A DNA stretch of 64,000 nucleotides from positions 53,910,430 through 53,974,429 of the forward strand of contig NC_090399.1 of the NCBI RefSeq assembly GCF_036365525.1, read 5' to 3'. This document shows positions 1-64,000 of the stretch, piece by piece. Below the pieces are notes generated by a model. It was not told where the DNA came from. It searched no databases and saw only the letters and a list, made by a program, of their open reading frames with translations. Made by a program: the position numbers and the translations under genes. The number at the start of each line of letters is the position of its first letter. Position 1 is the first letter of the stretch. Origin of the DNA: Heterodontus francisci (lineage: Eukaryota).

Positions 1-3000
1 GTTTAATATCTGGTTTATTCCTGTTTAATATCTGTCTTTGCACCTGTTTATTATCTGGTTTATCCCTGTTTAATATCTGTCTTTATTCCTGTTTAATATC
101 TGTCTTTGTACCTGTTTAATATCTGGTTTATTCCTGTTTAATATCTGTCTTTGTACCTGTTTAATATCTGGTTTATTCCTGTTTAATATCTGTCTTTGTA
201 CCTGTTTAATATCTGTCTTTATTCCTGTTTAATATCTGTCTTTGTACCTGTTTAATATCTGGGTTTATTCCTGTTTAATATCTGTCTTTGTACCTGTTTA
301 ATATCTGGTTTATTCCTGTTTAATATCTGTCTTTGTACCTGTTTAATATCTGCTTTATTCCTGTTTAATATCTGTCTTTGTACCTGTTTTATATCTGGGT
401 TCATTCCTCTTTATTATCTGGTTTATCCCTGTTTAACATCTGCTTTATTCCTGTTTAATATCTGTCTTTGTACCTGTTTAATATCTGGTTTATTCCTGTT
501 TAATATCTGTCTTTGTACCTGTTTAATATCTGGTTTATCCCTGTTTAATATCTGTCTTTATTCCTGTTTAATATCTGTCTTTGTACCTGTTTAATATCTG
601 GTTTATTCCTGTTTAATATCTGTCTTTGTACCTGTTTAATATCTGGTTTATCCCTGTTTATTATCTGGTTTATCCCTGTTTAATATCTGCTTTATTCCTG
701 TTTAATATCTGTCTTTGTACCTGTTTATTATCCGGTTTATCCCTGTTTAATATCTGGTTTATCCCTTTTTAATAGTTGGGTTTATTCCTGTTTTATATCT
801 GGGTTCATTCCTCTTTATTATCTGGTTTATCCCTGTATAATATCTGGTTTATCCCTGTTTAATATCTGGGTTTATCCATGTTTAATGGCTGGGTTCATTC
901 CATGCTTAATATATGGCTGTACTCCCTGTTTAATATCTGGTTTATTCCTGTTTAATATCTGTCTTTGTACCTGTTTAATATCTGGTTTATCCCTGTTTAT
1001 TATCTGGTTTATCCCTGTTTAATATCTGCTTTATTCCTGTTTAATATCTGTCTTTGTACCTGTTTATTATCTGGTTTATCCCTGTTTAATATCTGGTTTA
1101 TCCCTTTTTAATAGTTGGGTTTATTCCTGTTTTATATCTGGGTTCATTCCTCTTTATTATCTGGTTTATCCCTGTTTAATATCTGGTTTATCCCTGTTTA
1201 ATAGTTGGGTTTATTCCTGTTTTATATCTGGGTTCATTCCTCTTTATTATCTGGTTTATCCCTGTTTAATATCTGTCTTTGTACCTGTTTAATATCTGGT
1301 TTATTCCTGTTTAATATCTGTCTTTGTACATGTTTAATATCTGTCTTTATTCCTGTTTAATATCTGTCTTTGTACCTGTTTCATATCTGGGTTTATTCCT
1401 GTTTAATATCTGTCTTTGTACCTGGTTAATATCTGGTTTATTCCTGTTTAATATCTGTCTTTGTACCTGTTTAATATCTGCTTTATTCCTGTTTAATATA
1501 TGTCTTTGTACCTGTTTAATATCTGGTTTATTCCTGTTTAATATCTGTCTTTGTACCTGTTTAATATCTGCTTTATCCCTGTTTATTATCTGGTTTATGC
1601 CTGTTTAATATCTGGTTTATCCCTGTTTAATATCTGTCTTTGTACCTGTTTAATATCTGGTTTATCCCTGTTTAATATCTGGTTTATCCCTTTTTAATAG
1701 TTGGGTTTATTCCTGTTTTATATCTGGGTTCATTCCTCTTTATTATCTGGTTTATCCCTGTTTAATATCTGGTTTATCCCTGTTTAATAGTTGGGTTTAT
1801 TCCTGTTTTATATCTGGGTTCATTCCTCTTTATTATCTGGTTTATCCCTGTTTAATATCTGGTTTATTCCTGTTTAATATCTGGTTTATCCCTGTTTAAT
1901 ATCTGGTTTATCCCTGTTTAATATCTGGTTTATCCCTTTTTAATATCTGCTTTATTCCTGTTTAATATCTGTCTTTGTACCTGTTTAATATCTGGTTTAT
2001 TCCTGTTTAATATCTGTCTTTGTACCTGTTTAATATCTGGTTTATCCCTGTTTTATATCTGGTTTATCCCTGTTTAATATCTGTCTTTATTCCTGTTTAA
2101 TATCTGTCTTTGTACCTGTTTAATATCTGGTTTATTCCTGTTTAATATCTGTCTTTGTACCTGTTTAATTTCTGGTTTATCCCTGTTTAATATCTGGTTT
2201 ATCCCTGTTTAATATCTGTCTTTATTCCTGTTTAATATCTGTCTTTGTACCTGTTTAATATCTGGTTTATTCCTGTTTAATATCTGTCTTTGTACCTGTT
2301 TAATATCTGCTTTATTCCTGTTTAATATCTGTCTTTGTACCTGTTTAATATCTGGTTTATTCCTGTTTAATATCTGTCTTTGTACCTGTTTAATATCTGT
2401 CTTTATTCCTGTTTAATATCTGTCTTTGTACCTGTTTAATATCTGGTTTATTCCTGTTTAATATCTGTCTTTGTACCTGTTTAATATCTGGTTTATTCCT
2501 GTTTAATATCTGTCTTTATTCCTGTTTAATATCTGTCTTTGTACCTGTTTAATATCTGCTTTATTCCTGTTTAATATCTGTCTTTGTACCTGTTTAATAT
2601 CTGGTTTATTCCTGTTTAATATCTGTCTTTGTACCTGTTTAATATCTGGTTTATTCCTGTTTAATATCTGTCTTTGTACATGTTTAATATCTGTCTTTAT
2701 TCCTGTTTAATATCTGTCTTTGTACCTGTTTCATATCTGGGTTTATTCCTGTTTAATATCTGTCTTTGTACCTGGTTAATATCTGGTTTATTCCTGTTTA
2801 ATATCTGTCTTTGTACCTGTTTAATATCTGCTTTATTCCTGTTTAATATATGTCTTTGTACCTGTTTAATATCTGGTTTATTCCTGTTTAATATCTGTCT
2901 TTGTACCTGTTTAATATCTGCTTTATCCCTGTTTATTATCTGGTTTATGCCTGTTTAATATCTGGTTTATCCCTGTTTAATATCTGTCTTTGTACCTGTT

Positions 3001-6000
3001 TAATATCTGGTTTATTCCTGTTTAATATCTGTCTTTATTCCTGTTTAATATCTGTCTTTGTACCTGTTTAATATCTGCTTTATTCCTGTTTAATATCTGT
3101 CTTTGTACCTGTTTAATATCTGGTTTATTCCTGTTTAATATCTGTCTTTGTACCTGTTTAATATCTGGTTTATTCCTGTTTAATATCTGTCTTTGTACCT
3201 GTTTAATATCTGTCTTTATTCCTGTTTAATATCTGTCTTTGTACCTGTTTAATATCTGGGTTTATTCCTGTTTAATATCTGTCTTTGTACCTGGTTAATA
3301 TCTGGTTTATTCCTGTTTAATATCTGTCTTTGTACCTGTTTAATATCTGCTTTATTCCTGTTTAATATCTGTCTTTGTACCTGTTTAATATCTGGTTTAT
3401 TCCTGTTTAATATCTGTCTTTGTACCTGTTTAATATCTGCTTTATCCCTGTTTATTATCTGGTTTATCCCTGTTTAATATCTGGTTTATCCCTGTTTAAT
3501 ATCTGTCTTTGTACCTGTTTAATATCTGCTTTATCCCTGTTTATTATCTGGTTTATTCCTGTTTAATATCTGTCTTTGTACCTGTTTAATATCTGCTTTA
3601 TTCCTGTTTAATATCTGTCTTTGTACCTGTTTAATATCTGGTTTATTCCTGTTTAATATCTGTCTTTGTACCTGTTTAATATCTGGTTTATCCCTGTTTA
3701 ATATCTGGTTTATCCCTGTTTAATAGTTGGGTTTATTCCTGTTTTATATCTGGGTTCATTCCTCTTTATTATCTGGTTTATCCCTGTTTAACATCTGCTT
3801 TATTCCTGTTTAATATCTGTCTTTGTACCTGTTTAATATCTGGTTTATTCCTGTTTAATATCTGTCTTTGTACCTGTTTAATATCTGGTTTATCCCTGTT
3901 TAATATCTGTCTTTATTCCTGTTTAATATCTGTCTTTGTACCTGTTTAATATCTGGTTTATTCCTGTTTAATATCTGTCTTTGTACCTGTTTAATATCTG
4001 GTTTATCCCTGTTTATTATCTGGTTTATCCCTGTTTAATATCTGCTTTATTCCTGTTTAATATCTGTCTTTGTACCTGTTTATTATCTGGTTTATCCCTG
4101 TTTAATATCTGGTTTATCCCTTTTTAATAGTTGGGTTTATTCCTGTTTTATATCTGGGTTCATTCCTCTTTATTATCTGGTTTATCCCTGTTTAATATCT
4201 GGTTTATCCCTGTTTAATATCTGGGTTTATCCCTGTTTAATGGCTGGGTTCATTCCATGCTTAATATATGGCTGTACCCCCTGTTTAATATCTGGTTTAT
4301 TCCTGTTTAATATCTGTCTTTGTACCTGTTTAATATCTGGTTTATCCCTGTTTATTATCTGGTTTATCCCTGTTTAATATCTGGTTTATCCCTTTTTAAT
4401 AGTTGGGTTTATTCCTGTTTTATATCTGGGTTCATTCCTCTTTATTATCTGGTTTATCCCTGTTTAATATCTGGTTTATCCCTGTTTAATATATGTCTTT
4501 GTACCTGTTTAATATCTGGTTTATCCCTGTTTAATATCTGTCTTTGTACCTGTTTAATATCTGGTTTATCCCTGTTTAATATCTGGTTTATCCCTGTTTA
4601 ATAGTTGGGTTTATTCCTGTTTTATATCTGGGTTCATTCCTCTTTATTATCTGGTTTATCCCTGTTTAATATCTGGTTTATTCCTGTTTAATATCTGTCT
4701 TTGTACCTGTTTAATATCTGGTTTATCCCTGTTTAATATCTGTCTTTGTACCTGTTTAATATCTGGTTTATCCCTGTTTAATATCTGTCTTTGTACCTGT
4801 TTATTATCTGGTTTATCCCTGTTTAATATCTGGTTTATCCCTGTTTAATAGTTGGGTTTATCCCTGTTTAATATCTGGTTTATCCCTGTTTAATATCTGG
4901 TTTATCCCTGTTTAATAGTTGGGTTTATCCCTGTTTAATATCTGGTTTATCCCTGTTTAATATCTGGTTTATCCCTGTTTAATATCTGGTTTATCCCTGT
5001 TTAATATCTGGTTTTTCCCTTTTTAATAGTTGGGTTTATCCCTGTTTAATATCTGGTTTATCCCTGTTTAATATCTGGTTTATCCCTGTTTAATATCTAG
5101 TTTATCCCTGTTTAATATCTGGTTTATCCCTGTTTAATAGTTGGGTTTATCCCTGTTTAATATCTGGTTTATCCCTGTTTAATATCTGGTTTATCCCTGT
5201 TTAATATCTGGTTTTTCCCTTTTTAATAGTTGGGTTTATCCCTGTTTAATATCTGGTTTATCCCTGTTTAATATCTGGTTTATCCCTGTTTAATATCTGG
5301 TTTATCCCTGTTTAATATCTGGTTTATCCCTGTTTAATATCTGGTTTTTCCCTTTTTAATAGTTGGGTTTATTCCTGTTTTATATCTGGGTTCATTCCTC
5401 TTTATTATCTGGTTTATCCCTGTTTAATATCTGGTTTATCCCTGTTTAATATCTGGTTTATCCCTGTTTAATATCTGGTTTTTCCCTTTTTAATAGTTGG
5501 GTTTATTCCTGTTTTATATCTGGGTTCATTCCTCTTTATTATCTGGTTTATCCCTGTTTAATATCTGGTTTATCCCTGTTTAATATCTGGTTTATCCCTG
5601 TTTAATATCTGGTTTATCCCTGTTTAATAGTTGGGTTTATCCCTGTTTAATATCTGGTTTATCCCTGTTTAATATCTGGTTTATCCCTGTTTAATAGTTG
5701 GGTTTATCCCTGTTTAATATCTGGTTTATCCCTGTTTAATATCTGGTTTATCCCTGTTTAATATCTGGTTTATCCCTGTTTAATATCTGGTTTTTCCCTT
5801 TTTAATAGTTGGGTTTATTCCTGTATTATATCTGGGTTCATTCCTCTTTATTATCTGGTTTATCCCTGTTTAATATATGGTTTATCCCTGTTTAATATCT
5901 GGTTTATTCCTCTTTATTATCTGGTTTATCCCTGTTTAATATCTGGTTTATCCCTGTTTAATATCTGGTTTATCCCTGTCTAATATCTGGGTTTATTCCT

Positions 6001-9000
6001 GTTTAATATCTGGTTTATCCCTGTTTAATATCTGGTTTATCCCTGTTTAATATCTGGTTTTTCCCTTTTTAATAGTTGGGTTTATTCCTGTTTTATATCT
6101 GGGTTCATTCCTCTTTATTATCTGGTTTATCCCTGTTTAATATCTGGTTTTTCCCTTTTTAATAGTTGGGTTTATCCCTGTTTAATATCTGGTTTATCCC
6201 TGTTTAATATCTGGTTTATCCCTGTTTAATATCTGGTTTATCCCTGTTTAATATCTGGTTTATCCCTGTTTAATATATGGTTTATCCCTGTTTAATAACT
6301 GGTTTATCCCTGTTTAATATCTGGTTTATCCCTGTCTAATATCTGGGTTTATTCCTGTTTAATATCTGGTTTATCCCTGTTTAATATCTGGTTTATCCCT
6401 GTTTAATATCTGGTTTTTCCCTTTTTAATAGTTGGGTTTATTCCTGTTTTATATCTGGGTTCATTCCTCTTTATTATCTGGTTTATCCCTGTTTAATATC
6501 TGGTTTTTCCCTTTTTAATAGTTGGGTTTATCCCTGTTTATTATCTGGTTTATCCCTGTTTAATATCTGGTTTTTCCCTTTTTATTAGTTGGGTTTATTC
6601 CTGTTTTATATCTGGGTTCATTCCTCTTTATTATCTGGTTTATCCCTGTTTAATATCTGGTTTTTCCCTTTTTAATAGTTGGGTTTATTCCTGTATTATA
6701 TCTGGGTTCATTCCTCTTTATTATCTGGTTTATCCCTGTTTAATATCTGGTTTATTCCTCTTTATTATCTGGTTTATCCCTGTTTAATATATGGTTTATC
6801 CCTGTTTAATAACTGGTTTATCCCTGTTTAATATCTGGTTTATCCCTGTTTAATATCTGGTTTATCCCTGTTTAATATATGGTTTATCCCTGTTTAATAA
6901 CTGGTTTATCCCTGTCTAATATCTGGGTTTATTCCTGTTTAATGGCTGGGTTCATTCACTGCTTAATATATGACTGTACTCCCTGTTTAATAACTGGTTT
7001 ATTCCTCTTTATTATCTGGTTTATCCCTGTTTAATATATGGTTTATCCCTGTTTAATAACTGGTTTATCCCTGTTTAATATCTGGTTTATCCCTGTTTAA
7101 TATCTGGTTTATCCCTGTTTAATATATGGTTTATCCCTGTTTAATAACTGGTTTATCCCTGTCTAATATCTGGGTTTATTCCTGTTTAATGGCTGGGTTC
7201 ATTCACTGCTTAATATATGACTGTACTCCCTGTTTAATATCTGGTTTATCCCTGTTTAATAGTTGGGTTTATTCCTGTATTATATCTGGGTTCATTCCTC
7301 TTTATTATCTGGTTTATCCCTGTTTAATATCTGGTTTATTCCTCTTTATTATCTGGTTTATCCCTGTTTAATATATGGTTTATCCCTGTTTAATAACTGG
7401 TTTATCCCTGTCTAATATCTGGGTTTATTCCTGTTTAATGGCTGGGTTCATTCACTGCTTAATATATGACTGTACTCCCTGTTTAATAACTGGTTTATTC
7501 CTGTTTAATATCTGGTTTATTCCTGTTTAATAACTGGTTTATCCCTGTTTAATATCTGGTTTATCCCTGTTTAATAACTGGTTTATCCCTGTTTAATATC
7601 TGGTTTATCCCTGTTTAATATCTGGTTTTTCCCTTTTTAATAGTTGGGTTTATTCCTGTATTATATCTGGGTTCATTCCTCTTTATTATCTGGTTTATCC
7701 CTGTTTAATATATGGTTTATCCCTGTTTAATATCTGGTTTATCCCTGTTTAATAGTTGGGTTTATTCCTGTATTATATCTGGGTTCATTCCTCTTTATTA
7801 TCTGGTTTATCCCTGTTTAATATATGGTTTATCCCTGTTTAATATCTGGTTTATCCCTGTTTAATATCTGGTTTTTCCCTTTTTAATAGTTGGGTTTATT
7901 CCTGTATTATATCTGGGTTCATTCCTCTTTATTATCTGGTTTATCCCTGTTTAATATCTGGTTTATCCCTGTTTAATAACTGGTTTATCCCTGTTTAATA
8001 TCTGGTTTATCCCTGTTTAATATCTGGTTTTTCCCTTTTTAATAGTTGGGTTTATTCCTGTATTATATCTGGGTTCATTCCTCTTTATTATCTGGTTTAT
8101 CCCTGTTTAATATCTGGTTTTTCCCTTTTTAATAGTTGGGTTTATTCCTGTATTATATCTGGGTTCATTCCTCTTTATTATCTGGTTTATCCCTGTTTAA
8201 TATCTGGTTTATCCCTGTTTAATAACTGGTTTATCCCTGTTTAATATCTGGTTTATCCCTGTTTAATATCTGGTTTTTCCCTTTTTAATAGTTGGGTTTA
8301 TTCCTGTATTATATCTGGGTTCATTCCTCTTTATTATCTGGTTTATCCCTGTTTAATATCTGGTTTTTCCCTTTTTAATAGTTGGGTTTATTCCTGTATT
8401 ATATCTGGGTTCATTCCTCTTTATTATCTGGTTTATCCCTGTTTAATATCTGGTTTATCCCTGTTTAATATCTGGTTTATCCCTGTTTAATATCTGGTTT
8501 ATCCCTGTTTAATATCTGGTTTTTCCCTTTTTAATAGTTGGGTTTATTCCTGTATTATATCTGGGTTCATTCCTCTTTATTATCTGGTTTATCCCTGTTT
8601 AATATCTGGTTTATCCCTGTTTAATAACTGGTTTATCCCTGTTTAATATCTGGTTTATCCCTGTTTAATATCTGGTTTTTCCCTTTTTAATAGTTGGGTT
8701 TATTCCTGTATTATATCTGGGTTCATTCCTCTTTATTATCTGGTTTATCCCTGTTTAATATCTGGTTTTTCCCTTTTTAATAGTTGGGTTTATTCCTGTA
8801 TTATATCTGGGTTCATTCCTCTTTATTATCTGGTTTATCCCTGTTTAATATATGGTTTATCCCTGTTTAATATCTGGTTTATTCCTCTTTATTATCTGGT
8901 TTATCCCTGTTTAATATATGGTTTATCCCTGTTTAATAACTGGTTTATCCCTGTTTAATATCTGGTTTATCCCTGTTTAATATCTGGTTTATCCCTTTCT

Positions 9001-9807
9001 AATATCTGGGTTTATTCCTGTTTAATGGCTGGGTTCATTCACTGCTTAATATATGACTGTACTCCCTGTTTAATAACTGGTTTATTCCTGTTTAATAACT
9101 GGTTTATTCCTGTTTAATATCTGGTTTATCCCTGTTTAATATCTGGTTTATCCCTGTTTAATAACTGGTTTATCCCTGTTTAATATCTGGTTTATCCCTG
9201 TTTAATAACTGGTTTATCCCTGTTTAATATCTGGTTTATCCCTGTTTAATAACTGGTTTATCCCTGTTTAATATCTGGTTTATCCCTGTTTAATATCTGG
9301 TTTATCCCTGTTTAACATCTGGGTTTATTCATGTTTAATATCTGTTTTATCCCTGTTTAATATCAGATTTATTCCTATTTAATATCTGGTTTATTCCTCT
9401 TTAATATCTGGTTCATCCCTTTTTAATATCTGTATTTATTCATGTTTAATAATTGGGTTTATCCCTGTTTAATATCAGATTTATTCCTGTTTAATATCTG
9501 GATTATCCCTGTTTAATATCTGTGTTTATTCCTCTTTAATATCTGGGTTTGTCCCTTTTTAATATCTGTCTTTTTCCTGTTTAATAATTGGGTTTATTCC
9601 TGTTTAATATCAGATTTATTCCTGTTTAATATCTGGTTTATTCCTGTCTAAATCTGGATTATCCCTGTTTAATATTTGTGTTTATTCCTCTTTAATATCT
9701 GGGTTTGTCCCTTTTTAATATCTGTGTTTATTCCTCTTTAATATCTGGGTTTGTCCTTGTTTCATAACTGTGTTTACTCCTGTAAAATATCTGGTTTATC
9801 CCTGTTT
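1..9807. repeat. T-rich tandem satellite, 22/23-bp monomers (consensus TTTATCCCTGTTTAATATCTGG), left segment; continues beyond window start
   Basis: Direct reading: continuous head-to-tail units sharing the core CCTGTTTAATATCTG. From 1 to ~4800 the 22-mer alternates with a 23-mer (CTTTGTACCTGTTTAATATCTGT), giving a 45-bp dimer. From ~4800 to 9300 the 22-mer dominates, with recurrent variant cassettes. Units are more degenerate after ~9300. Confidence 0.97.
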
Positions 9808-10297
9808 CTTTGGCCTCCTTGTCTCGAGAGACAATGGGTAAGTGCCTGGAGGTGGTCAGTGGTTTGTGAAGCAGCGCCTGGAGTGGCTATAAAGGCCAAT
9901 ACTAGAGTGACAGACTCTTCTACAGGTGCTGCAGATAAAATTGGTTGTCGGGGCTGTTACACAGTTGGCTCTCCCCTTGCGCTTCTGTCTTTTTTCCTGC
10001 CAACTGCTAAGTCTCTTCGACTCGCCACGCTTTAGCCCCGCCTTTATGGTTGCCCGCCTGCTCTGGCGATCACTGGCAACTGACTCCCATGACTTGTGAT
10101 CAATGTCACAGGACTTCATGCCGCATTTGCAGACGTCTTTAAAGCGGAGACATGGATGGCCGGTGGGTCTGATACCAGTGGCGAGCTCGCTGTACAATGT
10201 GTCCTTGGGGATCCTGCCATCTTCCATGCGGCTCACATGACCAAGCCATCTCAAGCGCCGCTGGCTTAGTAGGGTGTATATGCTGGGAATGTTGGCT
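9808..10297 (-). mobile_element. 5'-truncated RTE-clade non-LTR retrotransposon (LINE) 3' fragment inserted in the satellite
   Basis: The minus strand translates as ANIPSIYTLLSQRRLRWLGHVSRMEDGRIPKDTLYSELATGIRPTGHPCLRFKDVCK...W...A.DR..RR, the typical RTE ORF C-terminus. It ends in a CxxC...H...C zinc-finger-like motif, followed by a ~50-nt 3'UTR ending ...GGCCAAAG(AA). Candidate TSD TGTTT at 9803-9807 and 10300-10304. Confidence 0.88.
9856..10296 (-). pseudogene. C-terminal fragment of an RTE LINE ORF (post-RT region plus zinc-finger-like tail); no endonuclease or RT core
   Basis: ORF track 9856..10254 extended upstream in frame to the truncation point; no internal stops over ~146 codons; motif RWLGHVSRM...RIPK..LY.EL..G.RP.G.P.LRFKD. 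Confidence 0.85.
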
Positions 10298-11070: not shown

Positions 11071-11118
11071 ATCATGTTTTGCTTGCAGGTTCATGCTCCC
11101 AATGAGTTCTGTTACGTC

Positions 11119-11402: not shown

Positions 11403-11408
11403 GTAAGA
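11403..11408 (+). promoter_or_regulatory. 5' splice donor GTAAGA of the MHC exon
   Basis: AAG|GTAAGA is a near-consensus donor exactly where alpha-1 homology ends (EPK). Confidence 0.88.
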
Positions 11409-52335: not shown

Positions 52336-55300
52336 GTGGAGGGAAGGGTGGGGCTGATCGGGTACATGGAGGAACAGGGGAGTGTGGAGTGGAGGGAAGG
52401 GTGGGGCTGATCGGGTACAAAGAGGAACAGGGGAGTGTGGAGTTTAGGGAAGGGTGGGGCTGATCGGGTACATCGAGGAACAGGGGAGTGTGGAGTGGAG
52501 GGAAGGGTGGGGCTGATCGGGTACATCGAGGAACAGGGGAGTGTGGAGTGGAGGGAAGGGTGGGGCTGATCGGGTACATAGAGGATCAGGGGAGTGTGGA
52601 GTTTAGGGAAGGGTGGGGCTGATCGGGTACATCGAGGAACAGGGGAGTGTGGAGTGGAGGGAAGGGTGGGGCTGATCGGGTACATGGAGGAACAGGGGAG
52701 TGTGGAGTGGAGGGAAGGGTGGGGCTGATCGGGTACAAAGAGGAACAGGGGAGTGTGGAGTTTAGGGAAGGGTGGGGCTGATCGGGTACATCGAGGAACA
52801 GGGGAGTGTGGAGTGGAGGGAAGGGTGGGGCTGATCGGGTACATCGAGGAACAGGGGAGTGTGGAGTGGAGGGAAGGGTGGGGCTGATCGGGTACATAGA
52901 GGATCAGGGGAGTGTGGAGTTTAGGGAAGGGTGGGGCTGATCGGGTACATCGAGGAACAGGGGAGTGTGGAGTGGAGGGAAGGGTGGGGCTGATCGGGTA
53001 CATCGAGGAACAGGGGAGTGTGGAGTGGAGGGAAGGGTGGGGCTGATCGGGTACATCGAGGAACAGGGGAGTGTGGAGTGGAGGGAAGGGTGGGGCTGAT
53101 CGGGCACATGGAAGAACAGGGGAGTGTGGAGTGGAGGGAAGGGTGGGGCTGATCGGGTACATGGAGGAACAGGGGAGTGTGGAGTGGAGGGAAGGGTGGG
53201 GCTGATCGGGCACATGGAAGAACAGGGGAGTGTGGAGTGGAGGGAAGGGTGGGGCTGATCGGGTACATGGAGGAACAGGGGAGTGTGGAGTCGAGGGAAG
53301 GGTGGGGCTGATCGGGTACATGGAGGAACAGGGGAGTGTGGAGTGGAGGGAAGGGTGGGGCTGATCGGGTACAAAGAGGAACAGGGGAGTGTGGAGTGGA
53401 GGGAAGGGTGGGGCTGATCGGGTACATAAAGGAACAGGGGAGTGTGGAGTGGAGGGAAGGGTGGGGCTGATCGGGTACCTGGAGGAACAGGGGAGTGTGG
53501 AGTGGAGGGAAGGGTGGGGCTGATCGGGTACAAAGAGGAACAGGGGAGTGTGGAGTGGAGGGAAGGGTGGGGCTGATCGGGTACATAGAGGAACAGGGGA
53601 GTGTGGAGTGGAGGGAAGGGTGGGGCTGATCGGGTACATAAAGGAACAGGGGAGTGTGGAGTGGAGGGAAGGGTGGGGCTGATCGGGTACATGGAGGAAC
53701 AGGGGAGTGTGGAGTGGAGGGAAGGGTGGGGCTGATCGGGTACATAGAGGAACAGGGGAGTGTGGCGTGAAGGGAAGGGTGGGGCTGATCAGGTACATGG
53801 TGGAACAGGGGAGTGTGGAGTGGAGGGAAGGGTGGGGCTGATCGGGTACATGGTGGAACAGGGGAGTGTGGAGTGGAGGGAAGGGTGGGGCTGATCGGGT
53901 ACATAGAGGAACAGGGGAGTGTGGAGCGGAGGGAAGGGTGGGGCTGATCGGGTACATAGAGGAACAGGGGAGTTTGGAGTGGAGGGAAGGGTGGGGCTGA
54001 TCGGGTAAATGGAGGAACAGGGGAGTGTGGAGCGGAGGGAAGGGTGGGGCTGATCGGGTACATGGTGGAACAGGGGAGTGTGGAGTCGAGTGAAGGGTGG
54101 GGCTGATTGGGTACATAGAGGAACAGGGGAGTGTGGAGTGGAGGGAAGGGTGGGGCTGATCGGGTACATGGAGGAACAGGGGAGTGTGGAGCGGAGGGAA
54201 GGGTGGGGCTGATCGGGTACATAGAGGAACAGGGGAGTGTGGAGCGGAGGGAAGGGTGGGGCTGATCGGGTACATAGAGGAACAGGGGAGTGTGGAGTGG
54301 AGGGAAGGGTGGGGCTGATCGGGTACATGGAGGAACAGGGGAGTGTGGAGTGGAGGGAAGGGTGGGACTGATCGGGTACATGGAAGAACAGGGGAGTGTG
54401 GAGTGGAGGGAAGGGTGGGGCTGTTCGGGTACATGGAGGAACAGGGGAGTGTGGAGTGGAGGGAAGGGTGGGGCTGATCGGGTACAAAGAGGAACAGGGG
54501 AGTGTGGAGTGGAGGGAAGGGTGGGGCTGATCGGGTAAATAGAGGAACAGGGGAGTGTGGAGTGGAGGGAAGGTGTGGAGTGGAGGGAAGGGTGGGGCTG
54601 ATCGGGTACATGGAGGAACAGGGGAGTGTGGAGTGGAGGGAAGGGTGGGGCTGATCGGGTACATAGAGGATCAGGGGAGTGTGGAGTGGAGGGAAGGTGT
54701 GGAGTGGAGGGAAGGGTGGGGCTGATCGGGTACATGGAGGAACAGGGGAGTGTGGAGTGGAGGGAAGGGTGGGGCTGATCGGGTACATAGAGGATCAGGG
54801 GAGTGTGGAGTCGAGGGAAGGGTGGGGCTGATCGGGTACAAAGAGGAACAGGGGACTGTGGAGTGGAGGGAAGGGTGGGGCTGATCGGGTACAAAGAGGA
54901 ACAGGGGAGTGTGGAGTGGAGGGAAGGGTGGGGCTGATCGGGTACATAGAGGAACAGGGGAGTGTGGAGTGGAGGGAAGGGTGGGGCTGATCGGGTACAT
55001 GGAGGAACAGGGGAGTGTGGAGTGGAGGGAAGGGTGGGGCTGATCGGGTACATGGAGGAACAGGGGAGTGTGGAGTGGAGGGAAGGGTGGGGCTGATCGG
55101 GTACATAGAGGAACAGGGGAGTGTGGAGTGGAGGGAAGGGTGGGGCTGATCGGTAACATGGTGGAACAGGGGAGTGTGGAGTGGAGGGAAGGGTGGGGCT
55201 GATCGGGTACATGGAGGAACAGGGGAGTGTGGAGTGGAGGGAAGGGTGGGGCTGATCGGGTACAAAGAGGAACAGGGGAGTGTGGAGTGGAGGGAAGGGT

Positions 55301-58300
55301 GGGGCTGATCGGGTACATGGAGGAACAGGGGAGTGTGGAGTGGAGGGAAGGGTGGGGCTGATCGGGTACATGGAGGAACAGGGGAGTGTGGAGTGGAGGG
55401 AAGGGTGGGGCTGATCGGGTACATAGAGGAACAGGGGAGTGTGGAGTGGAGGGAAGGGTGGGGCTGATCGGGTACATGGAGGAACAGGGGAGTGTGGAGT
55501 GGAGGGAAGGGTGGGGCTGATCGGGTACATGGAGGAACAGGGGAGTGTGGAGTGGAGGGAAGGGTGGGGCTGATCGGGTACATGGAGGAACAGGGGAGTG
55601 TGGAGTGGAGGGAAGGGTGGGGCTGATCGGGTACATAGAGGAACAGGGGAGTGTGGAGCGGAGGGAAGGGTGGGGCTGATCGGGTACATGGAGGAACAGG
55701 GGAGTGTGGAGTGGAGGGAAGGGTGGGGCTGATCGGGTACATAGAGGAACAGGGGAGTGTGGAGCGGAGGGAAGGGTGGGGCTGATCGGGTACATAGAGG
55801 AACAGGGGAGTGTGGAGTGGAGGGAAGGGTGGGGCTGATCGGGTACATAGAGGAACAGGGGAGTGTGGAGTGGAGGGAAGGGTGGGGCTGATCGGGTACA
55901 TGGAGGAACAGGGGAGTGTGGAGTGGAGGGAAGGGTGGGGCTGATCGGGTACATAGAGGAACAGGGGAGTGTGGAGCGGAGGGAAGGGTGGGGCTGATCG
56001 GGTACATAGAGGAACAGGGGAGTGTGGAGTGGAGGGAAGGGTGGGGCTGATCGGGTACATAGAGGAACAGGGGAGTGTGGAGTGGAGGGAAGGGTGGGGC
56101 TGATCGGGTAAATGGAGGAACAGGGGAGTGTGGAGCGGAGGGAAGGGTGGGGCTGATCGGGTACATGGTGGAACAGGGGAGTGTGGAGTCGAGGGAAGGG
56201 TGGGGCTGATCGGGTACATGGAGGAACAGGGGAGTGTGGAGTGGAGGGAAGGGTGGGGCTGATCGGGTACATAGAGGAACAGGGGAGTGTGGAGTGGAGG
56301 GAAGGGTGGGGCTGATCGGGTACATAGAGGAACAGGGGAGTGTGGAGTGGAGGGAAGGGTGGGGCTGATCGGGTACATAGAGGAACAGGGGAGTGTGGAG
56401 TGGAGGGAAGGGTGGGGCTGATCGGGTACATGGAGGAACAGGGGAGTGTGGAGCGGAGGGAAGGGTGGGGCTGATCGGGTACATAGAGGAACAGGGGAGT
56501 GTGGAGCGGAGGGAAGGGTGGGGCTGATCGGGTACATAGAGGAACAGGGGAGTGTGGAGTGGAGGGAAGGGTGGGGCTGATCGGGTACATGGAGGAACAG
56601 GGGAGTGTGGAGTGGAGGGAAGGGTGGGGCTGATCGGGTACAAAGAGGAACAGGGGAGTGTGGAGTGGAGGGAAGGGTGGGGCTGATCGGGTACATGGAG
56701 GAACAGGGGAGTGTGGAGTGGAGGGACGGGTGGGGCTGATCGGGTACATGGAGGAACAGGGGAGTGTGGAGCGGAGGGAAGGGTGGGGCTGATCGGGTAA
56801 ATAGAGGAACAGGGGATTGTGGAGTGGAGGGAAGGGTGGGGCTGATCGGGTACATGGAGGAACAGGGGAGTGTGGAGTGGAGGGAAGGGTGGGGCTGATC
56901 GGGTACATGGAGGAACAGGGGAGTGTGGAGTCGAGGGAAGGGTGGGGCTGATCGGGTACATAGTGGAACAGGGGAGTCTGGAGTGGAGGGAAGGGTGGGG
57001 CTGATCGGGTACATAGAGGAACAGGGGAGTGTGGAGTGGAGGGAAGGGTGGGGCTGATCGGGTACATGGAGGAAATGGGGAGTGTGGAGTCGAGGGAAGG
57101 GTGGGGCTGATCGGGTACATGGAGGAAATGGGGAGTGTGGAGTGGAGGGAAGGGTGGGGCTGATCGGGTACATGGAGGAACAGGGGAGTGTGGAGTGGAG
57201 GGAAGGGTGGGGCTGATCGGGTACATGGAGGAACAGGGGAGTGTGGAGTGGAGGGAAGGGTGGGGCTGATCGGGTACATGGAGGAACAGGGGAGTGTGGA
57301 GTGGAGGGAAGGGTGGGGCTGATCGGGTACATGGAGGAAATGGGGAGTGTGGAGTGGAGGGAAGGGTGGGGCTGATCGGGTACATGGAGGAACAGGGGAG
57401 TGTGGAGTGGAGGGAAGGGTGGGGCTGATCGGGTACATGGAGGAACAGGGGAGTGTGGAGTGGAGGGAAGGGTGGGGCTGATCGGGTACATGGAGGAACA
57501 GGGGAGTGTGGAGTGGAGGGAAGGGTGGGGCTGATCGGGTACATCGTGGAACGGGGGAGTGTGGAGTGGAGGGAAGGGTGGGGCTGATCGGGTACAAAGA
57601 GGAACAGGGGAGTGTGGAGTGGAGGGAAGGGTTGGGCTGATCGGGTACATGGAGGAACAGGGGATTGTGGAGTGGAGGGAAGGGTGGGGCTGATCGGGTA
57701 CATAGAGGAACAGGGGAGTGTGGAGTGGAGGGAAGGGTGGGGCTGATCGGGTACATGGAGGAACAGGGGATTGTGGAGTGGAGGGAAGGGTGGGGCTGAT
57801 CGGGTACATAGAGGAACAGGGGAGTGTGGAGTGGATGGAAGGGTGGGGCTGATCGGGTACATGGAGGAACAGGGGATTGTGGAGTGGAGGGAAGGGTGGG
57901 GCTGATCGGGTACATGGAGGAACAGGGGATTGTGGAGTGGAGGGAAGGGTGGGGCTGATCGGGTACATGGAGGAACAGGGGAGTGTGGAGTGGAGGGAAG
58001 GGTGGGGCTGATCGGGTACATGGAGGAACAGGGGAGTGTGGAGTGGAGGGAAGGGTGGGGCTGATCGGGTACATAGAGGAACAGGGGAGTGTGGAGCGGA
58101 GGGAAGGGTGGGGCTGATCGGGTACATAGAGGAACAGGGGAGTGTGGAGTGGAGGGAAGGGTGGGGCTGATCGGGTACATGGAGGAACAGGGGAGTGTGG
58201 AGTGGAGGGAAGGGTGGGGCTGATCGGGTACATGGAGGAACAGGGGAGTGTGGAGTGGAGGGAAGAGTGGGGCTGATCGGGTACATGGAGGAACAGGGGA

Positions 58301-61300
58301 GTGTGGAGTGGAGGGAAGGGTGGGGCTGATCGGGTACATGGAGGAACAGGGGAGTGTGGAGTGGAGGGAAGGGTGGGGCTGATCGGGTACAAAGAGGAAC
58401 AGGGGAGTGTGGAGTGGAGGGAAGGGTGGGGCTGATCGGGTACATAGAGGAACAGGGGAGTGTGGAGCGGAGGGAAGGGTGGGGCTGATCGGGTACATAG
58501 AGGAACAGGGGAGTGTGGAGTGGAGGGAAGGGTGGGGCTGATCGGGTACATGGAGGAACAGGGGAGTGTGGAGTGGAGGGAAGGGTGGGGCTGATCGGGT
58601 ACAAAGAGGAACAGGGGAGTGTGGAGTGGAGGGAAGGGTGGGGCTGATCGGGTACATGGAGGAACAGGGGAGTGTGGAGTGGAGGGACGGGTGGGGCTGA
58701 TCGGGTACATGGAGGAACAGGGGAGTGTGGAGCGGAGGGAAGGGTGGGGCTGATCGGGGACATGGAGGAACAGGGGAGTGTGGAGTCGAGGGAAGGGTGG
58801 GGCTGATCGGGTACATAGAGGAACAGGGGAGTCTGGAGTGGAGGGAAGGGTGGGGCTGATCGGGTACATAGAGGAAATGGGGAGTGTGGAGTCGAGGGAA
58901 GGGTGGGGCTGATCGGGTACATGGAGGAAATGGGGAGTGTGGAGTCGAGGGAAGGGTGGGGCTGATCGGGTACAAAGAGGAACAGGGGACTGTGGAGTCG
59001 AGGGAAGGGTGGGGCTGATCGGGTACATGGAGGAACAGGGGAGTCTGGAGTGGAGGGAAGGGTGGGGCTGATCGGGTACATAGAGGAACAGGGGAGTGTG
59101 GAGTGGAGGGAAGGGTGGGGCTGATCGGGTACATAGAGGAACAGGGGAGTGTGGAGTGGAGGGAAGGGTGGGACTGATCGGGTACATGGAGGAACAGGGG
59201 AGTCTGGAGTGGAGGGAAGGGTCGGGCTGGTCGGGTACATGGAGGAACAGGGGAGTGTGGAGTGGAGGGAAGGGTGGGACTGATCGGGTACATAGAGGAA
59301 ATGGGGTGTGTGGAGTGGAGGGAAGGGTGGGGCTGATCGGGCACATGGAAGAACAGGGGAGTGTGGAGTGGAGGGAAGGGTGGGGCTGATCGGGTACATG
59401 GAGGAACAGGGGAGTGTGGAGTGGAGGGAAGGGTGGGGCTGATCGGGTACAAAGAGGAACAGGGGAGTGTGGAGTGGAGGGAAGGGTGGGGCTGATCGGG
59501 TACATAGAGGAACAGGGGAGTGTGGAGTTTAGGGAAGGGTGGGGCTGATCGGGTACATAGAGGAACAGGGGAGTGTGGAGTGGAGGGAAGGGTGGGGCTG
59601 ATCGGGTACATAGAGGAACAGGGGAGTGTGGAGTGGAGGGAAGGGTGGGGCTGATCGGGTACATGGAGGAACAGGGGATTGTGGAGTGGAGGGAAGGGTG
59701 GGGCTGATCGGGTACAAAGAGGAACAGGGGAGTGTGGAGTGGAGGGAAGGGTGGGGCTGATCGGGTACATAGAGGAACAGGGGAGTGTGGAGTTTAGGGA
59801 AGGGTGGGGCTGATCGGGTACATGGAGGAACAGGGGAGTGTGGAGTGGAGGGAAGGGTGGGGCTGATCGGGTACATAGAGGAACAGGGGAGTGTGGAGTG
59901 GAGGGAAGGGTGGGGCTGATCGGGTACATAGAGGAACAGGGGAGTGTGGAGTGGAGGGAAGGGTGGGGCTGATCGGGTACATGGAGGAACAGGGGATTGT
60001 GGAGTGGAGGGAAGGGTGGGGCTGATCGGGTACATGGAGGAACAGGGGATTGTGGAGTGGAGGGAAGGGTGGGGCTGATCGGGTACATGGAGGAACAGGG
60101 GAGTGTGGAGTGGAGGGAAGGGTGGGGCTGATCGGGCACATGGAAGAACAGGGGAGTGTGGAGTGGAGGGAAGGGTGGGGCTGATCGGGTACATGGAGGA
60201 ACAGGGGAGTGTGGAGTGGAGGGAAGGGTGGGGCTGATCGGGTACATGGAGGAACAGGGGAGTGTGGAGTGGAGGGAAGGGTGGGGCTGATCGGGTACAT
60301 GGAGGAACAGGGGAGTGTGGAGTCGAGGGAAGGGTGGGGCTGATCGGGTACATGGAGGAACAGGGGAGTGTGGAGTGGAGGGAAGGGTGGGGCTGATCGG
60401 GTACAAAGAGGAACAGGGGAGTGTGGAGTGGAGGGAAGGGTGGGGCTGATCGGGTACATAAAGGAACAGGGGAGTGTGGAGTGGAGGGAAGGGTGGGGCT
60501 GATCGGGTACATAAAGGAACAGGGGAGTGTGGAGTGGAGGGAAGGGTGGGGCTGATCGGGTACATAAAGGAACAGGGGAGTGTGGAGTGGAGGGAAGGGT
60601 GGGGCTGATCGGGTACATAGAGGAACAGGGGAGTGTGGAGTGGAGGGAAGGGTGGGGCTGATCGGGTACATGGAGGAACAGGGGAGTGTGGAGTGGAGGG
60701 AAGGGTGGGGCTGATCGGGTACATGGAGGAACAGGGGAGTGTGGAGTGGAGGGAAGGGTGGGGCTGATCGGGTACAAAGAGGAACAGGGGAGTGTGGAGT
60801 GGAGGGAAGGGTGGGGCTGATCGGGTACATAGAGGAACAGGGGAGTGTGGAGTGAAGGGAAGGGTGGGGCTGATCGGGTACATGGAGGAACAGGGGAGTG
60901 TGGAGTGGAGGGAAGGGTGGGGCTGATCGGGTACATAGAGGAACAGGGGAGTGTGGAGTGGAGGGAAGGGTGGGGCTGATCGGGTACATGGAGGAACAGG
61001 GGATTGTGGAGTGGAGGGAAGGGTGGGGCTGATCGGGTACATGGAGGAACAGGGGAGTGTGGAGTGGAGGGAAGGGTGGGGCTGATCGGGCACATGGAAG
61101 AACAGGGGAGTGTGGAGTGGAGGGAAGGGTGGGGCTGATCGGGTACATGGAGGAACAGGGGAGTGTGGAGTCGAGGGAAGGGTGGGGCTGATCGGGTACA
61201 TGGAGGAACAGGGGAGTGTGGAGTGGAGGGAAGGGTGGGGCTGATCGGGTACAAAGAGGAACAGGGGAGTGTGGAGTGGAGGGAAGGGTGGGGCTGATCG

Positions 61301-64000
61301 GGTACATAAAGGAACAGGGGAGTGTGGAGTGGAGGCTGGGTGGGGCTGATCGGGTACATAGAGGAACAGGGGAGTGTGGAGTGAAGGGAAGGGTGGGGCT
61401 GATCGGGTACATGGAGGAACAGGGGAGTGTGGAGTGGAGGGAAGGGTGGGGCTGATCGGGTACATGGAGGAACAGGGGAGTGTGGAGTGGAGGGAAGGGT
61501 GGGGCTGATCGGGTACATGGAGGAACAGGGGAGTGTGGAGTGGAGGGAAGGGTGGGGCTGATCGGGTACATAGAGGAAGAGGGGAGTGTGGAGTGGTAGG
61601 AAGGGTGAGGCTGATCGGGTACATGGAGGAACAGGGGAGTGTGGAGTGGAGGGAAGGGTGGGGCTGATCGGGTACATAGAGGAACAGGGGAGTGTGGAGT
61701 GGAGGGAAGGGTGGGGCTGATCGGGTACATGGAGGAACAGGGGAGTGTGGAGTGGAGGGAAGGGTGGGGCTGATCGGGTACAAAGAGGAACAGGGGAGTG
61801 TGGAGTGGAGGGAAGGGTGGGGCTGATCGGGTACATGGAGGAACAGGGGAGTGTGGAGTGGAGGGAAGGGTGGGGCTGATCGGGTACATAGAGGAACAGG
61901 GGAGTGTGGAGTGAAGGGAAGGGTGGGGCTGATCGGGTACATGGAGGAACAGGGCAGTGTGGAGTGGAGGGAAGGGTGGGGCTGATCGGGTACATGGAGG
62001 AACAGGGGAGTGTGGAGTGGAGGGAAGGGTGGGGCTGATCGGGTACATGGAGGAACAGGGGAGTGTGGAGTGGAGGGAAGGGTGGGGCTGATCGGGTACA
62101 TGGAGGAACAGGGGAGTGTGGAGTGGAGGGAAGGGTGGGGCTGATCGGGTACATAGAGGAACAGGGGAGTGTGGAGCGGAGGGAAGGGTGGGGCTGATCG
62201 GGTACATAGAGGAACAGTAGAGTGTGGAGTGGAGGGAAGGGTGGGGCTGATCGGGTACATGGAGGAACAGGGGAGTGTGGAGCGGAGGGAAGGGTGGGGC
62301 TGATCGGGAACATGGTGGAACAGGGGAGTGTGGAGCGGAGGGAAGGGTGGGGCTGATCGGGTACATGGAGGAACAGGGGAGTGTGGAGTGGAGGGAAGGG
62401 TGGGGCTGATCGGGTACATGGAGGAACAGGGGAGTGTGGAGCGGAGGGAAGGGTGGGGCTGATCGGGTACATAGATGAACAGGGGAGTGTGGAGTGGAGG
62501 GAAGGGTGGGGCTGATCGGGTACATGGAGGAACAGGGGAGTGTGGAGTGGAGGGAAGGGTGGGGCTGATCGGGTACAAAGAGGAACAGGGGAGTGTGGAG
62601 TGGAGGGAAGGGTGGGGCTGATCGGGTACATGGAGGAAATGGGGAGTGTGGAGTCGAGGGAAGGGTGGGGCTGACCGGGTACAAAGAGGAACAGGGGAGT
62701 GTGGAGTGGAGGGAAGGGTGGGGCTGATCGGGTACAAAGAGGAACAGGGGAGTGTGGAGTGGAGGGAAGGGTGGGGCTAATCGGGTACATGGTGGAACAG
62801 GGGAGTGTGGAGTCGAGGGAAGGGTGGGGCTGATTGGGTACATAGAGGAACAGGGGAGTGTGGAGTGGAGGGAAGGGTGGGGCTGATCGGGTACATGGAG
62901 GAACAGGGGAGTGTGGAGCGGAGGGAAGGGTGGGGCTGATCGGGGACATAGAGGAACAGGGGAGTGTGGAGTGGAGGGAAGGGTGGGGCTGATCGGGTAC
63001 ATGGAGGAACAGGGGAGTGTGGAGTGGAGGGAAGGGTGGGGCTGATCGGGTACAAAGAGGAACAGGGGAGTGTGGAGTGGAGGGAAGGGTGGGGCTGATC
63101 GGGTAAATAGAGGAACAGGGGTGTGTGGAGTGGAGGGAAGGGTGGGGCTGATCGGGTACATGGAGGAAATGGGGAGTGTGGAGTCGAGGGAAGGGTGGGG
63201 CTGATCGGGTACAAAGAGGAACAGGGGAGTGTGGAGTGGAGGGAAGGGTGGGGCTGATCGGGTACAAAGAGGAACAGGGGAGTGTGGAGTGGAGGGAAGG
63301 GTGGGGCTGATCGGGTACATGGAAGAACAGGGGAGTGTGGAGTGGAGGGAAGGGTGGGGCTGATCGGGTACATGGAGGAACAGGGGAGTGTGGAGTCGAG
63401 GGAAGCTGGGGCTGATCGGGTACATGGAGGAACAGGGGAGTGTGGAGTGGAGGGAAGGGTGGGGCTGATCGGGTACATAGAGGAACAGGGGAGTGTGGAG
63501 TGGAGGGAAGGGTGGGGCTGATCGGGTACATGGAGGAACAGGGGAGTGTGGAGTGGAGGGAAGGGTGGGGCTGATCGGGTACATGGAGAAACAGGGGAGT
63601 GTGGAGTGGAGGGAAGGGTGGGGCTGATCGGGTACATGGAGGAACAGGGGAGTGTGGAGTGGAGGGAAGGGTGGGGCTGATCGGGTACATGGAAGAACAG
63701 GGGAGTGTGGAGTGGAGGGAAGGGTGGGGCTGATCGGGTACATGGAGGAACAGGGGAGTGTGGAGTCGAGGGAAGGGTGGGGCTGATCGGGTACATAGAG
63801 GAACAGGGGAGTGTGGAGTGGAGGGAAGGGTGGGGCTGATCGGGTACATAGAGGAACAGGGGAGTGTGGAGTGAAGGGAAGGGTGGGGCTGATCGGGTAC
63901 ATGGAGAAACAGGGCAGTGTGGAGTGGAGGGAAGGGTGGGGCTGATCGGGTACATGGAGGAACAGGGGAGTGTGGAGTGGAGGGAAGGGTGGGGCTGATC

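What the first reader, a model, noticed from the sequence alone, without database searches (positions are those of the whole stretch)
1..64000. An intact MHC class II alpha-1 exon stranded between two giant satellites: a candidate MHC gene with satellite-filled giant introns
Seen: the exon at 11154-11402 is open, full-length and has good phase-1 splice sites. There is no leader exon in the 11 kb upstream and no alpha-2 (Ig C1) exon in the 52.6 kb downstream; only ~1.2 kb of non-satellite DNA surrounds it. Established: class II A genes of mammals and teleosts are typically a few kb with short introns around exon 2, and satellite-filled giant introns are known mainly from cases such as the Drosophila Y fertility genes. 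Inference: this is either an expressed >64-kb class II alpha gene whose introns are two unrelated satellite arrays, or an orphaned exon. In the first case, array length could affect expression timing, recombinationally isolate or shuffle the polymorphic peptide-binding exon, and hide such loci from short-read assemblies.
Basis: partly seen in the sequence, partly recalled or inferred. Interest (0 to 1): 0.8.

Follow-up and report, generated by a model that had tools for sequence, protein, structure and literature searches.

The report
Shark MHC gene with satellite introns
The lone exon is the peptide-binding exon of a real, annotated and expressed horn shark MHC class II alpha gene. The introns on both sides of it are filled with tens of kilobases of tandem repeats, which is unusual for an immune gene but has been seen at other MHC genes of this genome.

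Summary
Window 11154-11402 is an open, phase-1 MHC class II alpha-1 exon (Pfam PF00993, E 1e-14). It sits in 1.17 kb of non-satellite DNA between a 22-bp AT-rich satellite (over 10.5 kb) and a 53-bp G-rich satellite (over 51 kb).

It is not an orphan. Its 82 residues match residues 24-105 of a full-length 247-aa RefSeq protein of Heterodontus francisci (XP_067865883.1/XP_067865884.1) exactly. That protein has a leader, an alpha-2 domain and a TM/tail.

Contigs from RNA-type runs of the same animal match the exon without a difference. They leave the genome exactly at the predicted donor (11402|11403) and continue into the first codons of that protein's alpha-2 domain. A DNA contig of the same animal runs straight on into the intron.

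None of the other exons is in the window. So intron 1 is over 11.15 kb (95% satellite), intron 2 is over 52.6 kb (98% satellite), and the gene is over 64 kb.

The gene is a divergent paralogue of the main class II alpha gene about 1.9 Mb away. Its contigs are roughly 60-1000 times shallower than that gene's, and it lacks the alpha-1 N-glycosylation site.

Earlier notes of this scan report the same architecture at MHC class I genes on this chromosome.

The parts
1..9807 (+). Intron 1 (part): 22-bp AT-rich satellite, consensus GTTTAATATCTGGTTTATCCCT with a 45-bp dimer. It runs off the window's start and is T-rich on the gene's sense strand.
   Evidence: TRF gives 437 copies at 83-86% match. GC is 0.30-0.33 and AT skew is -0.5. 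AG occurs 40 times against CT 964 times.
9808..10299 (-). Non-satellite insert inside satellite 1. From reading, it looks like a 5'-truncated retroelement tail, antisense to the gene.
   Evidence: The k-mer scan marks it as non-satellite. There is a minus-strand ORF of 132 aa at 9856-10254 with no Pfam family. The retroelement assignment rests on reading only.
10300..11072 (+). Intron 1 (part): satellite 1 resumes, 34 copies.
   Evidence: TRF.
11073..11153 (+). Last 81 bases of intron 1: a (CT)n(CA)n pyrimidine-rich tract followed by the acceptor CAG.
   Evidence: Sequence read directly. The split codon T|AC fits Tyr23 of XP_067865883.1. Use of the acceptor is not shown directly, because read laying skipped 11073-11159 as repeat.
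11154..11402 (+). Exon 2 (alpha-1, peptide-binding domain) of a horn shark MHC class II alpha gene, phase 1 at both ends.
   Evidence: Open frame. Pfam PF00993, E 1e-14. It is identical to residues 24-105 of P0013 = XP_067865883.1/XP_067865884.1. Contigs of RNA-type runs are identical over 11160-11402 and spliced at 11402.
11403..12243 (+). Start of intron 2, non-satellite. It begins with the donor GTAAGA. The stretch 11793-12243 is a dispersed repeat of this genome.
   Evidence: A DNA contig of the same animal is collinear over 11160-11860 with 0 differences. Summed DNA depth is 3.5-8 up to about 11792 and then 800-12,000.
12244..32995 (+). Intron 2 (part): 53-bp G-rich satellite with one canonical G-quadruplex motif per unit on the sense strand.
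   Evidence: TRF gives 976 copies at 95% match. GC skew is +0.74. There are 868 G4 motifs on + and 0 on -. With G4 folding allowed, a G4 appears in the RNA minimum-energy fold.
32996..33262 (.). 267-bp SINE-like insertion in satellite 2, flanked by an 8-bp target-site duplication GAAGGGTG (32988-32995 and 33263-33270).
   Evidence: Sequence read directly, composition dip, k-mer scan. No Rfam family matches at E up to 1.
33263..64000 (+). Intron 2 (part): the 53-bp satellite continues and runs off the window's end. It includes an exact tandem duplication of about 3.9 kb at roughly 44471-52338.
   Evidence: TRF. The longest exact repeat is 3946 bases at a lag of 3922.

Best explanation
The exon is exon 2 (alpha-1 domain) of an intact, transcribed and correctly spliced MHC class II alpha gene of the horn shark (RefSeq XP_067865883.1/XP_067865884.1, 247 aa).

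It is a second, divergent class II alpha locus of the DBA type, about 1.9 Mb from the highly expressed class II alpha gene on the same 74.5-Mb sequence.

Its introns 1 and 2 have been inflated by two unrelated tandem arrays, so the primary transcript must be over 64 kb. RNA polymerase II has to read through at least 10.6 kb of U-rich and at least 51 kb of G-rich repeat RNA.

The 249-nt exon is probably recognised by exon definition, through its long pyrimidine tract with CAG acceptor and its near-consensus donor.

Shown: domain identity, identity to the annotated protein, use of the donor site and the join to alpha-2, absence of the partner exons from the window, and the satellite content.

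Inferred: use of the acceptor, transcription through the arrays, and that the arrays are passengers of a repeat-rich chromosome rather than functional parts. The much lower contig depth than the paralogue's may or may not be caused by the arrays.
For: - Pfam MHC_II_alpha, E 1e-14.
- P0013 contains the exon's 82 residues exactly, flanked by the leader MEAGSYLTVLTLGVIHGAWAGEY, a C1-set alpha-2 domain (Pfam E 6e-21) and a TM/tail. The accessions and the 74,466,956-bp record come.
- Read laying: contigs of 420 and 415 nt (depth 338 and 163) from two RNA-type runs of the same animal match 11160-11402 with 0 differences. They diverge from the genome exactly after 11402 into TTCCTCCACAGATTGCCATGTACCC. 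With the exon's last G this reads VPPQIAMYP, which is residues 106-114 of P0013.
- The DNA contig of the same animal instead continues collinearly into the intron as far as 11860.
- That 25-mer and all other parts of P0013 are absent from the window.
- Satellites make up 94.9% of the 11,153 bases upstream and 97.9% of the 52,598 bases downstream.
- No donor-like site in either intron part reaches the true donor's 6/7 match. Satellite 2 itself offers no pyrimidine-tract acceptor.
Against: - The runs are labelled 'RNA?' as a guess by the tool. The spliced junction is the evidence that they are RNA.
- The acceptor junction was not displayed, because 11073-11159 was skipped as repeat.
- Contiguity and the true length of the arrays could not be checked. 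Read laying allows one call, and Logan contigs cannot span satellites.
- The gene's own contigs are about 60-1000 times shallower than those of the paralogue.
- The protein has 7 unique changes at nearly invariant elasmobranch positions and lacks the alpha-1 N-glycosylation sequon. It may therefore be a weakly used or decaying locus, not a working classical gene.
Confidence: 0.85

Rival explanations
1. Orphan exon. It would be a relic alpha-1 exon left between two satellites after the rest of the gene was lost, neither expressed nor spliced.
For: No partner exon lies in the 64 kb. The unique DNA around the exon is very small. The sequence is somewhat deviant and has lost the N-glycosylation sequon.
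Against: Contigs from RNA-type runs are identical to the exon and spliced at its donor to an alpha-2 start. A complete 247-aa annotated protein contains the exon exactly. The frame is open over all 82 codons.
Confidence: 0.03
2. Assembly artefact. The exon would belong to a compact gene, and one or both arrays are wrongly joined to it or grossly over-extended by the assembler, so the giant introns are not real.
For: Long arrays of 95%-identical 53-bp units are hard to assemble. An exact tandem duplicate of about 3.9 kb inside satellite 2 could be either biology or an assembler quirk. No read evidence across the satellite junctions was obtained here.
Against: Both junctions (11072/11073 and about 12243/12244) lie 1.2 kb apart, well within one long read (inference). 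The window has no N. The arrays carry old insertions, including one with a target-site duplication, and many unit variants: 111 distinct units among 706. The annotated model needs partner exons outside the window anyway. Earlier scan notes describe the same architecture at several other MHC genes of this chromosome; I did not check those notes.
Confidence: 0.08
3. The transcripts come from another copy. This could be the other haplotype or an unassembled duplicate with an identical alpha-1 exon and short introns, with the copy in this window silent.
For: Logan contigs cannot tell which of several identical copies was transcribed. Shark class II regions hold one to four alpha and beta copies depending on species (PMC10751288).
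Against: Only one DNA contig path at single-copy depth (3.5) covers the exon and its intron flank in the DNA run of the same animal. The protein was recorded on a single contig.
Confidence: 0.04

Closest known systems
Elasmobranch MHC class II alpha genes of the DBA lineage (Almeida et al. 2020, PMC8010645), in particular the horn shark paralogue XP_067865873.1
   Same: Same domain order: leader, alpha-1, C1-set alpha-2, CP/TM/CYT, 247 aa. His-alpha5 is present, which is the DBA state (DAA has Tyr). Also shared are Asp27, Asp29/Glu30, Asn69, the two alpha-2 cysteines, an N-I-T sequon in alpha-2 and a nearly identical TM/tail.
   Different: Identity to the paralogue is 67% in alpha-1 and 80% in alpha-2. 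The tree branch is about twice as long and is not resolved as the paralogue's sister. There are 7 unique changes at near-invariant sites, against a median of 2. The conserved alpha-1 N-glycosylation sequon is lost (KNLS becomes KKES). Contig depth is about 60-1000 times lower. Introns 1 and 2 are over 11 and over 52 kb of satellite.
Drosophila Y-linked fertility genes kl-3 and kl-5 with satellite-containing gigantic introns (Fingerhut et al. 2019, PMC6508621)
   Same: A protein-coding gene whose small exons are separated by long arrays of simple tandem repeats. These must be transcribed and spliced out.
   Different: Here the repeats span tens of kilobases at least (upper bound unknown), not megabases. 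The units are 22 and 53 bp, not 5-7 bp. The gene is an immune gene on a recombining chromosome, not a male-germline gene on a heterochromatic Y. No dedicated expression programme is known or was tested.
Horn shark MHC class I gene with satellite-filled introns
   Same: Same genome and chromosome. An annotated, expressed MHC gene whose small exons are islands in more than 60 kb of tandem repeats. This is an AI note and was not re-tested here.
   Different: That gene is class I, not class II. One of its repeat families is said to derive from an exon and its splice site. Here I saw no likeness between the two satellites and the exon: tblastn of the protein on the arrays gives only E above 1.

Membership tests
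MHC class II alpha chain gene | Alpha-1 (peptide-binding) domain of the class II alpha type | tested here: met
   Pfam PF00993, E 1e-14, 54.5 bits against a cut-off of 23, on the exon alone. HLA-DQ/H2-A alpha chains are the best solved relatives.
MHC class II alpha chain gene | Membrane-proximal Ig C1-set alpha-2 domain with two cysteines, then connecting peptide, TM with the Gly motif, and a short tail | tested here: met
   This is met in the annotated protein P0013, which contains the exon: C1-set E 6e-21, LICLADGF...YSCHVDH, and the TM ICALGLTLGIISAVVGIILLI. These exons lie outside the window.
MHC class II alpha chain gene | Exon 2 in phase 1, spliced to the leader and alpha-2 exons | tested here: met
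   The donor join to alpha-2 is seen in two RNA-type runs. The acceptor join is only inferred, from the split Tyr23 codon and from the 147-151 contig letters lying 5' of 11160.
Classical (peptide-presenting) elasmobranch class II alpha | Conserved structural and peptide-bonding residues: His-alpha5/Asp-alpha27 salt bond, Asp29/Glu30, Asn-alpha69 | tested here: met
   These are H2, D24, D26/E27 and N67 of the exon's translation, aligned to DR/DQ numbering and to 24 elasmobranch sequences.
Classical (peptide-presenting) elasmobranch class II alpha | N-linked glycosylation sequon in alpha-1 (N-alpha75, conserved across most elasmobranchs; PMC8010645) | tested here: not met
   The exon has KKES where its relatives have KNLS or KNQS, and there is no N-X-S/T anywhere in alpha-1.
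Classical (peptide-presenting) elasmobranch class II alpha | High expression in immune tissue and polymorphism of alpha-1 | tested here: inconclusive
   The gene is expressed, but its contig depth is 18-338 against 3,300 to about 330,000 for the paralogue in the same runs. The tissue is unknown and depth is a poor measure. Polymorphism was not tested.
Classical (peptide-presenting) elasmobranch class II alpha | A linked beta-chain partner gene | not testable with these tools
Genes with satellite-containing giant introns (Drosophila kl-3/kl-5 type) | Introns made mostly of long tandem arrays | tested here: met
   94.9% of the visible 11.15 kb of intron 1 and 97.9% of the visible 52.6 kb of intron 2 are satellite.
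Genes with satellite-containing giant introns (Drosophila kl-3/kl-5 type) | Arrays are transcribed as part of the pre-mRNA, with megabase scale and a dedicated expression programme | not tested
The total intron length is unknown.

The most novel reading that the evidence does not exclude
Satellite inflation of introns may be a systematic, possibly consequential property of the MHC genes (class I and class II) on this horn shark chromosome, and not a one-off.

The arrays would physically and recombinationally separate the peptide-binding exon from the rest of the gene. They would also impose a long transcription delay and a sense-strand G-quadruplex/R-loop burden of about 870 motifs in intron 2. 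That burden could throttle expression, so that array growth turns a classical gene into a low-expressed one.

If so, it would contradict the picture of a 'compact, regimented' elasmobranch adaptive MHC.
Probability: 0.15. Interest if true: 0.75.

Novelty: new variant of a known kind. Interest (0 to 1): 0.45.

Why it matters
Class II A genes are textbook compact genes, and the cartilaginous-fish adaptive MHC has been described as highly regimented and compact (PMC10751288). This class II alpha gene is demonstrably spliced, yet its peptide-binding exon is an island of about 250 bases (with about 0.9 kb of flank) in more than 62 kb of tandem repeats.

That shows vertebrate splicing can cope with satellite-filled introns in an ordinary somatic gene. 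It gives a natural paralogue pair, one in this state and one highly expressed, for asking what such arrays cost in expression. It also warns that exon-by-exon or short-read surveys will miss or fragment such loci.

The interest is limited in three ways:
- The gene is already annotated.
- Intron and tandem-repeat expansion in shark genomes is known in general.
- This scan has already noted the same pattern at class I genes of the same chromosome.

Tried and rejected
- **Word search with the exon alone:** The search for homologous proteins found no candidate. Its length window (45-143 aa) excludes full-length chains, so this blank means nothing. The full-length relatives came from the search of protein representatives and from a second word search with the 271-aa hit.
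- **Earlier findings:** By sequence it was blank, which means nothing according to the operators. By words it gave no note on an alpha-2 exon.
- **RNA families:** Rfam gave no hit in the window at gathering scores and none at E up to 1 in 32900-33400.
- **Higher-order repeat in satellite 2:** I found only the 53-bp period with register drift, plus one local exact duplication of about 3.9 kb.
- **Long minus-strand ORFs in satellite 2 (up to 1043 aa):** these are mechanical. The repeat lacks stops in those frames and there is no Pfam family.
- **DM-like or other non-classical class II identity:** rejected. The protein sits inside the elasmobranch class II alpha group with DBA-type His-alpha5.
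- **Literature:** searches found no description of satellite-filled introns in shark MHC genes.
- **No joined model:** The exon was searched alone, and the full-length sequence used was the database protein as the tool returned it.
Full report
**What is in the window**

Tandem Repeats Finder and a k-mer scan show that almost all of the 64 kb is two unrelated satellites.
- The first is a 22-bp AT-rich unit (GTTTAATATCTGGTTTATCCCT, 45-bp dimer) covering 1-9807 and 10300-11072.
- The second is a 53-bp G-rich unit (976 copies, 95% match, GC skew +0.74) covering 12244-64000.

Only three stretches are not satellite.
- 9808-10299 is a 492-bp insert in satellite 1. From reading it looks like a truncated retroelement tail on the minus strand; it has no Pfam family.
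- 11073-12243 is 1,171 bp around the claimed exon.
- 32996-33262 is a 267-bp SINE-like insertion with an 8-bp target-site duplication.

There is no N in the window.

**The exon**

One frame of 11154-11402 is open for 82 codons and the other two have stops. The exon is preceded by a (CT)n(CA)n tract and CAG, and followed by GTAAGA.

Its translation matches Pfam MHC_II_alpha at E 1e-14, 54.5 bits against a curated cut-off of 23. Its best solved relatives are HLA-DQ and H2-A alpha chains.

**Is it an orphan?**

A word search with the 82 residues found nothing. That is expected, because the tool's length window excludes full-length chains. The exhaustive representative search found two shark relatives at 56% identity.

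Using the 271-aa relative as the query gave 32 cartilaginous-fish class II alpha chains, two of them from Heterodontus francisci on one 74,466,956-bp record.

One of these, P0013 (247 aa; XP_067865883.1 and XP_067865884.1), contains the window's 82 residues exactly as residues 24-105. Around them it has a signal peptide (MEAGSYLTVLTLGVIHGAWAGEY), a C1-set alpha-2 domain (Pfam E 6e-21), a connecting peptide, a transmembrane segment and a tail.

The split codons fit: T|AC gives Tyr23 at the acceptor and G|TT gives Val106 at the donor.

**Expression and splicing**

The unique 1,171 bases were used to find runs. Four runs of the same animal were then laid on that stretch.

Two runs that the tool labels 'RNA?' each hold one contig that matches 11160-11402 without a single difference. 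The contigs are 420 and 415 nt, at depth 338 and 163. Each then leaves the genome exactly after 11402 with TTCCTCCACAGATTGCCATGTACCC(T).

With the exon's last G this reads V-P-P-Q-I-A-M-Y-P, which is residues 106-114 of P0013 and a typical start of an alpha-2 domain.

In the DNA-type run of the same animal, the contig instead runs collinearly from the exon into the intron (11160-11860, 0 differences, depth 3.5). So the junction belongs to spliced RNA, and the predicted donor is used.

The contigs also carry 147-151 letters 5' of 11160. That is about what 6 exon bases, a 70-nt leader coding part and a 5' UTR of about 70-75 nt would need. The tool skipped 11073-11159 as repeat, so use of the acceptor is inferred and not shown.

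**Where the partner exons are**

They are not in the window. tblastn of P0013 against both strands hits only the alpha-1 exon (E 6e-52), and everything else has E above 1. The alpha-2 25-mer seen in the RNA contigs is absent even with three mismatches.

- Intron 1 is longer than 11,153 bases, 94.9% of them satellite.
- Intron 2 is longer than 52,598 bases, 97.9% of them satellite.
- The gene is therefore longer than 64 kb.

**What kind of class II alpha gene it is**

Much deeper contigs in the same runs match 11183-11299 at about 90%. Their depth is 3,308 in one run, about 10,000 in another, and sums to about 330,000 in the third.

Their 5' loose end reads Y-E-H-E-E-F-Q-V-Y-V. That is the other horn shark protein, P0016 (XP_067865873.1).

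Earlier notes of this scan place a class II alpha and beta gene pair 1.88-1.91 Mb before this window on the same sequence. I take that alpha gene to be P0016; this is plausible but unchecked.

The window's gene is thus the minor paralogue. By contig depth it is roughly 60-1000 times less abundant, and the tool itself warns that depth is a poor measure.

Both proteins have His at alpha-5. According to Almeida et al. 2020 that is the DBA state, while DAA has Tyr.

P0013 is 67% identical to P0016 in alpha-1 and 80% in alpha-2. In the tree it sits on an unresolved shark polytomy with a branch about twice as long, 0.29 against 0.16.

It has seven unique substitutions at positions that are nearly invariant in 24 other elasmobranch sequences, against a median of two. 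Five of the seven are in alpha-1. It has also lost the alpha-1 N-glycosylation sequon, with KNLS changed to KKES.

The salt-bond residues, Asn-alpha69, the Ig cysteines and the TM are intact. I read it as an intact but divergent and weakly expressed class II alpha locus. Whether it is classical is open.

**How it probably works (inference)**

The exon has the strongest splice signals in the window.
- No GT in either visible intron part reaches the true donor's 6 of 7 consensus matches.
- Satellite 2 offers no pyrimidine-tract acceptor. The five acceptor-like sites downstream all lie in the non-satellite start of intron 2 (one) or in the SINE-like insert (four).
- Satellite 1 is almost free of AG on the sense strand across both blocks (44 AG against 1,033 CT). 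About 25 variant units do create YAG behind a pyrimidine-rich stretch.

This is compatible with simple exon definition across giant introns. It is a single case, and the strand orientation could be chance.

The 53-bp unit carries one canonical G-quadruplex motif on the sense strand. There are 868 such motifs on + and none on -. With G4 folding allowed, the G4 enters the RNA minimum-energy fold at -45.5 against -20.5 kcal/mol for three units.

From general knowledge, a G-rich non-template strand favours R-loops and polymerase stalling. This could contribute to the low transcript level, but I did not test it.

**Context and novelty**

The gene itself is already annotated. Earlier notes of this scan report the same architecture at several MHC class I genes on the same chromosome, and one was followed up as an expressed, annotated gene with exons as islands in more than 60 kb of repeats. 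Those are AI notes that I did not re-test.

So the scan has found this before on other DNA, and the phenomenon looks regional or genome-wide, not peculiar to this gene.

Published work says that shark genome expansion goes with intron elongation and that some regions are dominated by simple tandem repeats (bioRxiv 10.1101/2025.06.08.657570).

The two main papers on cartilaginous-fish class II genes and MHC organisation do not mention introns or satellites. One of them calls the adaptive MHC compact.

The closest described analogue of the architecture is the group of Drosophila Y fertility genes with satellite-containing gigantic introns (PMC6508621).

**Limits**

- Array contiguity and length were not verified with reads.
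- The acceptor junction, the tissue of the RNA runs, polymorphism and the beta partner are unknown.
The exon was searched alone, and the full-length sequence used was the database protein as returned.

Noticed in passing
window 32996-33262: A 267-bp SINE-like element is inserted in the 53-bp satellite with a clean 8-bp target-site duplication (GAAGGGTG). This shows the array was already there when the element landed.
   Followed up: partly
window about 44471-52338: An exact 3,946-base repeat at a lag of 3,922 bases (74 units) lies inside the 53-bp satellite, giving two identical tandem blocks of about 3.9 kb. It is either a very recent unequal exchange or an assembler duplication.
   Followed up: partly
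window 12155-15374 and onward, minus strand: The minus strand of the 53-bp satellite has ORFs of up to 1,043 aa encoding a proline-rich 53-residue periodic sequence. They have no Pfam family and look mechanical, because the repeat has no stop in those frames.
   Followed up: partly
window 11793-12243: The last 450 bases before the 53-bp satellite are a dispersed repeat of this genome. Summed DNA contig depth there is 800-12,000, against 3.5 for the exon flank. The first degenerate satellite unit starts inside it, so the array may have grown out of this element.
   Followed up: no
window 11126-11153: A compound (CT)n(CA)n microsatellite abuts the acceptor of the peptide-binding exon. The DNA contig of the same animal breaks at 11126, inside it.
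   Followed up: no
window 9808-10299: A 492-bp non-satellite insert sits in the 22-bp satellite. Its minus-strand ORF (132 aa, ends ...CSTCRRVCHSSIGLYSHSRRCFTNH) reads like the C-terminal tail of a retroelement ORF2, antisense to the gene. It has no Pfam match.
   Followed up: partly
protein P0001 (Hemiscyllium ocellatum RefSeq model, 271 aa): Its first 47 or so residues are not a signal peptide and are unlike every other shark class II alpha leader. The true leader exon was probably missed by the gene model, perhaps because intron 1 is also very long in that species.
   Followed up: no
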